Position numbers and translations under genes: made by a program. Below, in pieces: positions 10,741-13,545 of a DNA stretch of 64,000 bases. The notes under the pieces are model-generated. The model saw only the letters and a list, made by a program, of their open reading frames with translations, did not search any database and had not been told where the DNA came from. Positions within the stretch are counted from its first letter, which is position 1, and each line of letters begins with the position of its first letter. Source of the stretch: Phallusia mammillata (Eukaryota); the NCBI GenBank assembly GCA_965637545.1, contig OZ281501.1:3348001-3412000 (forward strand), given 5' to 3'.

Positions 10741-11516
10741 TCAAGCTAGATCCACGTCCCACATATCAACTCCCGAATGGTGTTCTGTCAAAACCAGCTT
10801 TGATTCGTTGCCCAGTGCAACTGAGAGTAAGGTTCCTGATCGATTATTCCACGTAGAGCTGGGATGAAGAAACCCGAAACTTGCTCCACCTGTCCGCGTC
10901 ACATTGAGGACAAAAAGCCGGGGATCGCTGGTGTCAGAGTCGACGTCCACGTCCAGAGGGTCGCCCCATTTGCGTTCCGGTGACAATTTGATTTCTTGGC
11001 TGTCGGTATCACAGACAACGTATTTACGCTTTGAACGTACTGTAACAGCAAACATAAACGTGAGTGGAAATCCTGGCCTGGTTGAGCCAAATTGCCATCG
11101 TATGATAGGGTTTCCGCCATCGACTATTCGGAGTCCCCCTTGTGCCCCCCAGTGCCTGCCAAGCGTGGCGTGTCGAACGTAGCAATCTCTTTCTTCTGAG
11201 ACCCCGGCTTCTAATTCACAAGCGTGAGTTAGGGTGACCGGAGTTTCGCAGACTGGCGAGCCTATGAAGTTCTGCAGAAAATCGGTAAAGTGTTGCGTAA
11301 CCTTGCACTTTTCGCGAGGTTTTGGACTCGTGGATTTTGTTTCTGTTTCATCACTGGTCGCCTTTAGATTCATTTTCTTCATATCGGCCACGCCCGAGTA
11401 ACGCCGCACCGTCTGTTTTACGGATTCCTCTTCAATTATAAAACTTCGTCCGTTTTCGGTTTTAGTCTCTAATCCACAATTTGCACGGGTCGCGAGTTGT
11501 TCTGTCTCGAGTTTGA
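10741..11516 (-). CDS. exon 2 of gene B: leaderless precursor with C-terminal IL-1-family-like beta-trefoil (272 aa in total)
   Basis: Longest ORF in the window; minus-strand acceptor TTTATATTTTTCAG| phase 1; C-terminal ~147 aa shows CYVRH, GFPLTFMFAV..KYVVC, EIKL, DPRLFVL, FLHP, LLSV-x7-LVL, DMWDV, paralleling IL-1b/IL-18 strands. Confidence 0.75.
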
Positions 11517-11580
11517 CTGAAAAATATAAATAAACAAACTTGAGCATGTGTTTATCACGGCACGCTCATAAATATAAATT

Positions 11581-11645
11581 GTGAATGCTTGGTGACCGGC
11601 TGATTAGGTATGGCGCCTTAAATGGGCCTGGCGTACTGTGATTTA
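11581..11645 (+). repeat. SINE core fragment in the gene B intron
   Basis: GTGAATGCTTGGTGACCGGCTGATT..CGCCTT.AATGGGCCTGGCGTACTGTGATTTA matches 2863 and the reverse complement of 5258-5312. Confidence 0.7.
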
Positions 11646-13502
11646 TAATATAATATGTTTGTGTGAACCCAAAATATTTAATATCTCATTTCACACCTGC
11701 CTTCTTTATTTGCGATAGTTTAAGTTTTTTGGTTTTCGACTGTCGTATAAAAAAGGGGGCTGTCAAAACGTCATGCTTGACTCAAATTATTCTTCAAAAA
11801 ATATAAAATTTGTTTCTTGGCACAGGTGATTAAATCTTGCACAATTAGCACGCGATCAAGCGTGCCATCAGAAACTTGTGGGATCTCATCCCATCTCGGG
11901 TTTCGTTTAAGGAAGCTTTGGCTATTTCCTTAAAAGTCCTTTAACCGATTATGGACAAAGATAATGCAAAATTGTTTCATATAGAAAGCACCTTGACGGA
12001 TAACTCATTGTGAGCAAAATCTATGGTTAAATAGGGCGTTTTTTAGACCCCCAAGAAAAACGTTTTTTCCCTAGGTTGATAAATATACTCAAAGGTTCTG
12101 TTGTAATGGTGTAAAAAATGGTGACTTGGGGGGTGACATAGTTCGGTTTCACTTTCTCTACGTATCTATGCAAACGATACATTGATGTATCATCACCGTG
12201 ATCACGCCTGTTTGACCCAACAGGGTTCATAACCACCTGACCCGTTGAGCTCATCAAGGCACAGCGCGTTTCCCAATCTTAACGCGTCATACGATTCGAG
12301 TTAACTGCACCAATGTGACGTCATAAAGCCCTTTGTCATGTGGAACATCCGCTTGAATCGGTTTGTGACGAAGCGTTTACCACGTACCACAGTTTTACAT
12401 GTTGCTACAACGAAGCTCGAAATTGTGGGTAGAGCCCAACAGCAATTGTACATGTTAAATGCTGTTATGGTTCATAGGTCATTTAATGAGTGATATCTTG
12501 GTTGCGTTAGCTGACACTGTGCTGCCGATGCGTGGTTTTAGTAAAGCGGTTGTTGCACAATTTTGATTTACCCGATTTTAGAATTAACAAACCATTTACT
12601 ATTCACATCAGAGCAAAATATCAAATTAGTTTTAGTAAGTTTTTGACCTAAACGAGTTAATATTTATAATTGTAGCTGCTCAGGGGTAGAAAACGGCCTA
12701 CTACCTACTACTACTCTAAAAGATAACCACAGCTTTTATATGCTTAGAATTTCAAGACAGTTTTTTTCAGGTTTGGGTTAGTAGAAAATTGATGCCGAGT
12801 TAAAAAGAACCGAAAAAGTCACCAAACATATTAAGGCTTCTGCTTTAAGTGAAAGTCAATTAACACCAAATGTCATTAACAAGTGACGACAGCTCGTTGT
12901 AATCAACTGATTGTGTTCGGAACATTTACACAAAAATAACGTTTCAACATTGCGCAGCTATATAACTTCGGATGCAACATCAGTCACTCCTGTAGACTAA
13001 AGTACCCAGTACCACAGCATCGGGGGTAAGCTAGAAAAATCAGGTTAAGCTATAAATAAAGCTAGCTTGAAATGTCTTGACAAGCCAGTAAAGTTACGAA
13101 GGTTGTAAAATCAGGGTCGTAAATCTTAGACCAACCGACACAAATTTAGGTCTTAGCCAAAACGGTAGCGTCCTTTGTTGGTTTCAACCGAACTGAGTAA
13201 TGCTTATTATACAACCACGTCTATTGCAGTGTCTATGTTTGATTTTAGAGAGTTTACCTTATCGTAAAAGTTATCAACCTCTTCTTAAGTACAAATGCTC
13301 CAAGCTTTTGCTAAGACTCATTTACCACACTATTAAGAGCAAAGTTTAAGGTTTTTTAAAATTGCTAAATAAGATAATAAATGCCAATATCTATGTGCAA
13401 AGCATTGCGGCTTTTTAACATTTTGACAATAGTAAAATGCAACAATGTTTTGCACTAAAAATGTTTGTTTTTGCTTTTAACAAGTTTATAAAAGCAGCTT
13501 AC

Positions 13503-13545
13503 CTTCTGGGAGCCCATTTTCCTGCGATAGCTGCCTGCGTTCCAT
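13503..13545 (-). CDS. coding exon 1 of gene B (MERRQLSQENGLPE)
   Basis: ATG at 13545-13543, consensus donor AAG|GTAAGC, phase 1, joins exon 2 in frame (G+TC = Val). Confidence 0.75.

What the first reader, a model, noticed from the sequence alone, without database searches (positions are those of the whole stretch)
10741..13545. Leaderless IL-1-like cytokine precursor in an apparent invertebrate
Seen: a two-exon 272-aa protein with no signal peptide, a charged low-complexity N-terminal ~125 aa and a beta-rich C-terminal ~147 aa. Known: IL-1a/b precursors are about 270 aa with a pro-piece and a ~150-aa beta-trefoil; the family signature ends [FYLIV]-[LI]-[SCA]-T-x7-[LIVM]. Here LLSV-ALGNESK-L fits that tail (T to V), DPRLFVL aligns with EKRFVF, FPLTFMFAV..KYVVC with IPVALGL..LYLSC, and KLVLTE with IL-18 KLILKK. 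An Asp (SEERD125) sits at the domain boundary and is a possible caspase site. Inference: a highly diverged IL-1 family member that simple BLAST would likely miss.
Basis: partly seen in the sequence, partly recalled or inferred. Interest (0 to 1): 0.82.

Follow-up and report, generated by a model that had tools for sequence, protein, structure and literature searches.

The report
Sea-squirt IL-18-like beta-trefoil protein family
This is a real sea-squirt gene for a protein with no secretion signal whose folded half is predicted to look most like the inflammatory cytokine IL-18, which makes its small gene family a testable candidate for the IL-1-type cytokine that a 2026 survey failed to find in sea squirts.

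Summary
A two-exon gene on the minus strand (13545-13503 and 11516-10741) encodes 272 aa with no signal peptide, a poorly conserved N-terminal part and a 154-aa C-terminal domain. The genome is the ascidian Phallusia mammillata. The gene has two linked paralogues. It belongs to an unannotated family also found in Ciona intestinalis (LOC100187150), C. savignyi and Styela clava, and lies beside the multiplexin collagen gene as in Ciona.

Against membership: no IL1 profile or signature match, no [F/L]ES motif, no PDZ domain, an intronless trefoil, and no GCC2/ESD synteny. The proposed caspase Asp125 lies inside strand 1 and is not conserved. The margin over lectin trefoils is about 1 Z unit.

Verdict: a new tunicate beta-trefoil family, probably (about 50%) a diverged IL-1 superfamily branch. 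Cytokine function is untested.

The scan noted other orphan trefoil families elsewhere in this genome, but not this family.

The parts
13503..13545 (-). Putative coding exon 1: ATG plus 13 codons and 1 nt (MERRQLSQENGLPE), followed by donor GTAAGC at 13502-13497
   Evidence: The frame joins exon 2 to give 272 aa. There is no transcript evidence, so this is the least certain part.
11517..13502 (-). Intron of 1,986 nt (GT...AG) with a pyrimidine tract before the acceptor CAG at 11519-11517
   Evidence: The same layout (tiny first coding exon, then one large exon) is seen in Ciona LOC100187150. An acceptor lies at the same place in the orthologue contig L007.
10741..11516 (-). Coding exon 2: 258 codons plus a TGA stop at 10741-10743. 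It holds the whole conserved part of the protein.
11302..11516 (-). Poorly conserved, charged and Ser/Thr-rich N-terminal region (full-length residues 15-86). It resembles a pro-piece.
   Evidence: Identity to orthologue P0002 is 36% over the whole segment upstream of the trefoil (exon-2 residues 1-104, of which this region is the larger part), against 48% in the trefoil. pLDDT was low in the single-sequence model.
11266..11301 (-). Conserved amphipathic 'DFL' helix (TQHFTDFLQNF; full-length residues 87-98) about 20 residues upstream of the trefoil
   Evidence: Predicted as helix 2-13 in the model. The motif x-x-D-F-L is present in most family members.
11206..11265 (-). Linker (full-length residues 99-118) that is predicted disordered and contains no Asp
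   Evidence: (pLDDT 51-62).
10744..11205 (-). C-terminal 154-aa beta-trefoil domain (full-length residues 119-272) with 12 strands
10912..10962 (-). Family signature: the acidic strand 7-8 loop and the start of strand 8 (DPLDVDVDSDTSDPRLF). Asp and Arg of D-P-R-x-F are invariant.
11185..11187 (-). It lies inside strand 1 and is not conserved.
   Evidence: strand 1 = RDCYVRH; Gln in P0002; varied in the other members.

Best explanation
The window carries a real gene of the ascidian Phallusia mammillata. It is one of three linked paralogues of a previously uncharacterised family found in tunicates (Ciona LOC100187150, Styela LOC144425170, Ciona savignyi H2YZ46/47).

The product has no signal peptide. 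Its N-terminal part of about 118 aa evolves fast and is largely disordered, and it carries one conserved 'DFL' helix. Its C-terminal 154 aa form a 12-strand beta-trefoil whose nearest known structure is IL-18, followed by other IL-1 superfamily members.

The most likely reading is that the family is a strongly diverged, PDZ-less and intron-poor tunicate branch of the IL-1 superfamily. In this reading the protein is made in the cytosol as a precursor, released by a non-classical route or by cell damage, possibly trimmed in the linker, and acts through its trefoil on a cell-surface receptor.

Shown here: the gene, the family, the conserved synteny, the lack of a leader, the trefoil fold and its IL-18-like shape. 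Inferred only: common descent with IL-1, processing, release, receptor and any immune role.
For: Gene model and open frame.

Species: paralogue L002 is 100% identical over 247 aa to the Phallusia mammillata protein CAB3263054.1.

Family: two paralogues lie 42-48 kb away on the same contig. A profile search of 1.84 billion proteins finds only 13 hits. The named animal hits are Ciona and Styela proteins and the rest are unnamed. Linked second copies exist in Ciona, in Styela and on one unnamed contig.

Synteny: the gene lies head-to-head with the multiplexin collagen gene both here and in Ciona.

No leader or transmembrane segment in any member.

Fold: AF2 with the 16-sequence alignment A4 gives pLDDT 87.4, pTM 0.78 and 12 strands.

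Nearest structures:
- Foldseek against PDB: the top 18 hits are all human IL-18 (best E 1.4e-6, target TM 0.72, 16% identity). IL-33 follows at 6e-4, and non-IL-1 trefoils start at 1e-3.
- The all-representatives search aligns more residues with IL-1 family chains (130-140) than with lectin, FGF or fascin trefoils (112-132).
- ESM Atlas shape search: the two best rows are IL-18 clusters (TM 0.64 and 0.61, 142 and 137 aligned).

Independent of the AF2 model: language-model features of paralogue P0001:78-247 rank IL-18 (four clusters) and IL-33 first. The Atlas's own ESMFold model of P0001 is a trefoil with its highest query TM (0.66) to an IL-1 cluster.

No internal three-fold sequence repeat and no QxW motifs, unlike ricin-type lectins.

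Context: a 2026 study found IL-1 homologues across Eumetazoa but none in Ciona, Botryllus or Styela, using a PDZ-first screen that would miss PDZ-less proteins (PMC13736523).
Against: No sequence-level link. Pfam at E up to 10 gives nothing for the query, the paralogues or any of 16 members. The family profile against PDB sequences returns only noise. PF00340 against the whole genome finds nothing at this locus.

The PROSITE IL-1 pattern and [F/L]ES are absent. Strand 9 reads FGFLHP.

The trefoil is encoded without introns in Phallusia, Ciona and Styela. IL-1 and IL-1anc trefoils have 3-5 exons with two conserved-phase introns.

There is no PDZ domain. ESD lies on C7 and all GRIP-domain matches (the family I used for GCC2) on C5, so neither is linked. 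The two strong TIR matches in the genome are LRR-type Toll-like receptors on other contigs.

There is no conserved Asp at the pro-piece/trefoil junction.

The structural preference for IL-18 over HA33 is only about 1 Z unit, which the tool calls a tie. In the representative search HA33 (14.2) and IL-33 (14.0) are level.

Three of the four structural lines rest on one AF2 model built from a shallow alignment. The language-model hits share 146-152 of 256 features, below the 170 typical of same-family hits. For the query itself they named only ricin, I66, CDT and fascin trefoils.

There is no expression or functional data for this gene.
Confidence: 0.5

Rival explanations
1. This is an orphan tunicate beta-trefoil unrelated to IL-1, or related only at the level of the ancient trefoil fold. 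It works inside the cell, for example as a cytosolic lectin, a protease inhibitor or a scaffold. The resemblance to IL-18 then reflects similar size and loop lengths, not descent.
Against: Four searches put IL-18 or IL-1 first. IL-18 aligns end to end (154-residue span on both sides) at 15-16% identity, against 5% for HA33. There are no QxW motifs and no internal repeat. No lectin or inhibitor Pfam family matches. The layout of a leaderless pro-piece plus a C-terminal trefoil of about 155 aa is that of IL-1alpha/beta, IL-18 and IL-33.
Confidence: 0.38
2. It is a leaderless FGF-type trefoil, similar to FGF1/2 or to the intracellular FGF11-14.
Against: No PF00167 match appears at E up to 10 in any of 16 members, although FGF cores are usually easy to detect. 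FGFs rank about 3 Z units below IL-18 and align fewer residues. No FGF cluster appears among the language-model or Atlas hits.
Confidence: 0.03
3. It is not a functional gene: either a decaying duplicate or a chance open frame.
For: There is no transcript or protein record for this exact product (one search found no self-hit). Exon 1 is only predicted.
Against: The 258-codon frame is open in AT-rich DNA. It has an orthologue at 46% identity, with higher conservation in the trefoil than in the region before it. The hydrophobic core positions are conserved across the family. The fold is predicted with confidence. The paralogue's protein is on record under the names of P. mammillata and of Ciona.
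Confidence: 0.04

Closest known systems
Interleukin-18 (human; PDB 3wo2, 1j0s, 3f62) and the wider IL-1 superfamily (IL-33, IL-1alpha/beta, IL-36, IL-37; Pfam PF00340)
   Different: There is no detectable sequence or profile similarity. The PROSITE signature and [F/L]ES are absent. The trefoil has no introns. There is no conserved Asp at the junction. The family has its own signature (h-D-h-D ... D-P-R-x-F) and a conserved DFL helix in the pro-region. No receptor or activity is known.
IL-1anc, the ancestral IL-1 family of Eumetazoa (Fontenla-Iglesias et al., Nat Ecol Evol 2026, PMC13736523)
   Same: Both are leaderless, have a C-terminal IL-1-like trefoil recognised only by structure prediction, evolve fast and show lineage-specific duplication. 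A subset of IL-1anc also lacks the PDZ domain.
   Different: Most IL-1anc proteins carry an N-terminal PDZ domain, keep [F/L]ES, have 3-5 trefoil exons with conserved phases, and lie near GCC2, ESD and IL-1R genes. None of these holds here. That study reported no tunicate candidates.
Ricin-B-type lectin trefoils such as botulinum HA33 (PDB 1ybi, 3win)
   Different: Only 125-128 residues align at 5-6% identity. The family has no (QxW)3 motif, no three-fold sequence repeat and no Pfam ricin match. Ricin-type domains of animals are usually secreted or part of larger proteins.
Other orphan beta-trefoil families noted by this scan in the same genome (s1-364004, s1-344577)
   Same: They are sea-squirt-restricted, intron-poor trefoil proteins without a Pfam family (unchecked notes).
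   Different: The profile of the present family finds only its own three members in the genome, so those are separate families. Their follow-ups reported no IL-1 preference.

Membership tests
IL-1 superfamily (PF00340 / cd00100; IL-1, IL-18, IL-33, IL-1anc) | C-terminal 12-strand beta-trefoil of about 150 aa | tested here: met
IL-1 superfamily (PF00340 / cd00100; IL-1, IL-18, IL-33, IL-1anc) | Structure closer to IL-1 family members than to other trefoil superfamilies | tested here: met
IL-1 superfamily (PF00340 / cd00100; IL-1, IL-18, IL-33, IL-1anc) | Match to the Pfam IL1 profile or the PROSITE IL-1 signature | tested here: not met
   There is no Pfam hit at E up to 10 for 16 members. PF00340 against the genome gives nothing at this locus. 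The PROSITE pattern is absent, and its relaxed tail matches in 18% of shuffles.
IL-1 superfamily (PF00340 / cd00100; IL-1, IL-18, IL-33, IL-1anc) | [F/L]ES motif in strand 9 (often but not always conserved) | tested here: not met
   No [FL]ES occurs anywhere in the protein. Strand 9 is FGFLHP, and the family consensus is G-F-L-x-P-S.
IL-1 superfamily (PF00340 / cd00100; IL-1, IL-18, IL-33, IL-1anc) | No signal peptide; N-terminal pro-region | tested here: met
   The hydropathy scan shows no leader or transmembrane segment in 9 members. The region upstream of the trefoil is poorly conserved, at 36% against 48% identity in the trefoil.
IL-1 superfamily (PF00340 / cd00100; IL-1, IL-18, IL-33, IL-1anc) | Trefoil encoded by 3-5 exons with two conserved-phase central introns | tested here: not met
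   The trefoil lies in one exon in Phallusia (three genes), Ciona and Styela. Tunicates are known for intron loss, so this is weak negative evidence.
IL-1 superfamily (PF00340 / cd00100; IL-1, IL-18, IL-33, IL-1anc) | Caspase (Asp) cleavage site upstream of the trefoil | tested here: inconclusive
   The query linker has no Asp. Asp125 lies in strand 1 and is not conserved. Other members have non-aligned Asp residues in the linker. Cleavage itself cannot be tested with these tools.
IL-1anc (PMC13736523) | N-terminal PDZ domain (most members) | tested here: not met
   No PDZ or any other Pfam domain is found in the query or its paralogues.
IL-1anc (PMC13736523) | Linkage to GCC2, ESD or an IL-1R-like gene | tested here: not met
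   ESD-type esterase exons lie on C7 and all GRIP-domain exons (GCC2 carries a GRIP domain) on C5. The two strong TIR matches are LRR-type TLRs on C3 and C4. The larger ORFs of the window have no Pfam hit.
IL-1 superfamily (function) | Binding to an Ig-domain/TIR receptor; induction or release in immune responses | not testable with these tools
   No expression data or receptor candidate was examined here. A Ciona IL1R8-like protein is reported in PMC8226699, but I did not verify it.
Ricin-B-type lectins (PF00652 / PF14200) | Three-fold internal repeat with QxW motifs; profile match | tested here: not met
   hhalign between the three sub-domains gives probability <= 0.2%. There is no QxW motif in 15 of 16 members and no Pfam hit.
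FGF (PF00167) | Profile match to the FGF core | tested here: not met

The most novel reading that the evidence does not exclude
The family (Phallusia query gene plus two paralogues, Ciona LOC100187150, Styela LOC144425170) is the missing tunicate branch of the IL-1 superfamily. It would be an IL-18-like, PDZ-less lineage, possibly derived from a retrocopy. It could be the molecular identity of the 'tunicate IL-1-like activity' described biochemically since 1989. IL-1-type cytokines would then exist in all three chordate subphyla.
Probability: 0.4. Interest if true: 0.82.

Novelty: new variant of a known kind. Interest (0 to 1): 0.66.

Why it matters
IL-1-like activities were reported in tunicates decades ago, but no gene was ever found (review PMC9020223).

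The 2026 study that traced IL-1 back to cnidarians explicitly found no candidate in Ciona, Botryllus or Styela. It also warned that very divergent members may have been missed (PMC13736523). Tunicates are the closest living relatives of vertebrates, so that gap is conspicuous.

This family gives a concrete candidate that can be tested experimentally in Ciona, an established laboratory model. If it is an IL-1 relative, it shows how far the family can drift: it would have lost the PDZ domain, the introns and the FES motif while keeping the leaderless pro-piece and the IL-18-like trefoil.

If it is not an IL-1 relative, it is still an undescribed, conserved chordate protein family with a distinctive acidic loop motif.

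Tried and rejected
1. Sequence searches.
- Pfam scans of the query, the paralogues and 16 members gave no family.
- phmmer and profile searches against PDB sequences gave only noise.
- One member (P0010) returned only human IL-1alpha (E 0.34), co-linear over strands 6-10. Other members returned unrelated proteins at similar E-values, so I count this as weak support at most.

2. Word-index protein searches found nothing for the query and only known members for the alignments.

3. AF2 on a single sequence failed (pLDDT 31). Only the alignment-based model was used.

4. The neighbouring secreted ORF (6227-6673) was tested as a paralogue and rejected: hhalign probability 0.7% and no hit with the family profile.

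5. Caspase site at Asp125: rejected as a boundary site.

6. IL-1anc synteny (ESD, GCC2) and a linked TIR receptor: not found.

7. The two CRE-like TGACGTCA/TGACGTAA sites upstream of exon 1 are not a specific promoter signal, because the octamer is enriched throughout the window.

8. The bacterial DUF11 hits P0003 and P0012 from the three-sequence profile match in 7-8 short stretches. I judged them to be repeat or composition artefacts and left them out of the family.

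Full report
**The observation**

On the minus strand there is a 258-codon open frame ending at 10741. It is preceded by a long pyrimidine tract and a CAG acceptor at 11519-11517.

About 2 kb upstream, an ATG at 13545 sits in a good context. It opens a 43-nt exon that ends AAG|GTAAGC. Joining the two exons keeps the frame and gives 272 aa.

Exon 1 has no independent support, but the layout recurs. 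Ciona LOC100187150 has a first coding exon of three codons, an intron of about 100 nt, and then one exon for everything else. The orthologue contig L007 has an acceptor at the equivalent place.

All searches and folds below used exon 2 by reference. The joined product was handled only in local scripts, to check the frame and hydropathy, and was never searched.

**Which genome, and is the gene real?**

The assembly is 240 Mb. A paralogue 48 kb away encodes a protein 100% identical over 247 aa to Phallusia mammillata CAB3263054.1, 'uncharacterized protein LOC100187150'. The window therefore comes from this ascidian, not from a generic 'invertebrate'.

The genome holds exactly three members, all on contig C8 within about 50 kb.

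A profile of the three C-terminal domains was searched against 1.84 billion representative proteins and found 13 hits. The named animal hits are these:
- Ciona intestinalis LOC100187150
- Ciona savignyi H2YZ46/47
- Styela clava LOC144425170

The remaining hits are several unnamed proteins from ENA, JGI and Logan assemblies, and two bacterial DUF11 repeat proteins. The bacterial proteins match in 7-8 short stretches, and I regard them as artefacts.

Flanking DNA of the Ciona, Styela and one unnamed locus each holds a second, diverged copy.

In Ciona the gene lies about 9 kb from the multiplexin (XV/XVIII-type) collagen gene, on the opposite strand and head to head. In the window the collagen triple-helix exons are on the plus strand at 57.8-63.5 kb, again head to head with the query gene. 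Microsynteny is therefore conserved between the two species.

The closest orthologue (P0002) is 46% identical. Identity is 48% in the C-terminal domain and 36% before it. This is a real, conserved and fast-evolving gene (tree with long branches).

**Architecture**

No member has a signal-peptide-like or membrane-spanning stretch.

The N-terminal part is variable and rich in charged and Ser/Thr residues. About 20 residues before the folded domain, nearly all members share an amphipathic 'x-x-D-F-L' motif, which the model predicts as a helix.

The C-terminal 154 aa carry the family's conserved positions:
- Trp in strand 4, Phe in strand 5 and Tyr in strand 6
- a striking acidic loop, h-D-h-D, followed by D-P-R-x-F at the start of strand 8

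**Fold**

No Pfam family matches the query, the paralogues or any of 16 members at E up to 10. No solved structure matches by sequence.

Single-sequence AlphaFold2 failed (pLDDT 31). With the 16-sequence family alignment A4, the model of full-length residues 86-272 reached pLDDT 87.4 and pTM 0.78, and four of the five models agreed. It has one helix, a disordered linker and 12 strands.

**Which trefoil?**

- **Foldseek against PDB:** ranks 1-18 are all human IL-18 (E 1.4e-6 to 1.4e-4, target TM up to 0.75, 15-16% identity). IL-33 follows at 6e-4. Only from 1e-3 do lysenin, chicken IL-1beta, macrocypin, IL-36gamma and HA33 appear.
- **ESM Atlas shape search:** two IL-18 clusters come first (TM 0.64 and 0.61).
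- **Independent of my model:** language-model features of the paralogue's domain rank four IL-18 clusters and IL-33 first (0.90; 146-152 of 256 features shared). For the query itself, the unrestricted feature search named only ricin, I66, CDT and fascin trefoils.
- **Internal repeats:** the family has no three-fold sequence repeat and no QxW motifs.
they fall in strands 5, 6, 8, 10 and 11 of the model. From my memory of the IL-1beta and IL-18 structures, the partner segments lie in the same strands. This was not tested residue by residue.

**What argues against filing it as IL-1**

- There is no profile or signature match. PF00340 was also run against the whole genome.
- There is no [F/L]ES motif; strand 9 reads FGFLHP.
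- There is no PDZ domain.
- The trefoil has no introns in three genera. IL-1 and IL-1anc trefoils have 3-5 exons with conserved phases.
- ESD and all GRIP-domain matches (GCC2 is a GRIP-domain protein) are on other contigs.
- The two strong TIR matches are LRR-type Toll-like receptors elsewhere.
The query's linker has no Asp at all, and no Asp aligns across the family at the junction.
- The IL-18 lead over HA33 is about 1 Z unit, which the tool treats as a tie.
- The Foldseek, VIA and Atlas shape results share one AF2 model built from a shallow alignment.

Tunicates are known for intron loss and genome rearrangement, so the intron and synteny failures are weak negatives. The missing sequence link is the main gap.

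**Comparison with the literature**

Fontenla-Iglesias et al. (Nat Ecol Evol 2026, PMC13736523) found IL-1 homologues ('IL-1anc') from cnidarians to fishes. They first selected PDZ-domain proteins and then checked for FES and a predicted trefoil. They report that no candidates were detected in Ciona intestinalis, Botryllus schlosseri or Styela clava, and they note that divergent members may have been missed. A PDZ-less, FES-less family would escape that screen.

Two of the genomes they searched contain members of the present family.

Full-text searches found no paper that names LOC100187150 or describes a tunicate IL-18-like trefoil. The review PMC9020223 recalls IL-1-like activities in tunicates that were never characterised at the molecular level.

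**Mechanism proposed**

Shown here: a leaderless precursor with a disordered N-terminal part and an IL-18-shaped trefoil, conserved across ascidians and duplicated locally.

Inferred, at about 50% for common descent with IL-1 and less for function:
- synthesis in the cytosol
- non-classical or damage-linked release
- possible trimming in the linker by a protease that need not be a caspase
- signalling through the trefoil

The conserved DFL helix and the acidic D-x-D ... D-P-R-x-F loop are unexplained and may be partner-binding sites.

The main rival reading (about 38%) is an orphan intracellular trefoil with a lectin-like, inhibitor-like or scaffolding role.

**Verdict**

I classify the family as a new variant of a known kind: a trefoil family without sequence kin, closest in shape to IL-18. 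Its value is that it turns the question 'do tunicates have IL-1?' into experiments that can be done in Ciona.

Earlier notes of this scan describe other orphan trefoil families elsewhere in this genome. The profile of this family does not find them.

Noticed in passing
window 4399-6673 (+): This is a tail-to-tail neighbour gene. It has a short first exon that starts with a signal-peptide-like MKSLCALLFGQYLSLVF, and a 148-aa basic ORF with several N-x-S/T sites at 6227-6673. It has no Pfam hit and no detectable relation to the family studied here (hhalign probability 0.7%, no hit with the family profile). It is the subject of other notes of this scan.
   Followed up: partly
G000:C8:3310441-3310998 (-) = L002:1501-2241, and G000:C8:3316505-3317020 (+) = L003:1501-2016: These are two linked paralogues of 247 and 172 aa, roughly 70% identical to each other by eye in alignment A1 and 25-30% identical to the query. 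The first is identical to a deposited P. mammillata protein. The second lacks the N-terminal pro-region in its open frame, which begins 24 residues before the conserved domain.
   Followed up: partly
window 57817-63507 (+): Collagen Gly-X-Y exons of the multiplexin (XV/XVIII-type) gene run off the right end of the window. The head-to-head arrangement with the trefoil gene is shared with Ciona (L010).
   Followed up: partly
whole window, e.g. 13668-13675, 13698-13705, 12316-12323: The CRE-like octamer TGACGTCA/TGACGTAA occurs 35 times, against 4.07 expected from shuffles. Two copies lie 123-160 nt upstream of the putative start codon and one lies in the intron. The enrichment is window-wide and unexplained.
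   Followed up: no
L007:457-1209 (protein P0002): The called N-terminus of the orthologue (MCLFFAVPLAYEN...) is read through an intron's pyrimidine tract and acceptor (ttttttgcag at about 466-475). The true start is either an upstream exon or the ATG at 496.
   Followed up: partly
G000:C4:14522200-14536000 (L012, L015) and G000:C3:31293000-31302999 (L014): The only two strong TIR-domain matches in the genome belong to genes whose upstream exons encode leucine-rich repeats and an LRR C-terminal cap. They are therefore Toll-like receptors, not IL-1R-type receptors.
   Followed up: partly
proteins P0003 (1105 aa) and P0012 (692 aa): These bacterial DUF11-type repeat proteins matched the three-sequence profile in 7-8 stretches (E 1.8e-26 and 6e-5) over the Gly/Val/Thr-rich first strands of the two close paralogues. 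This is probably a repeat or composition effect.
   Followed up: no
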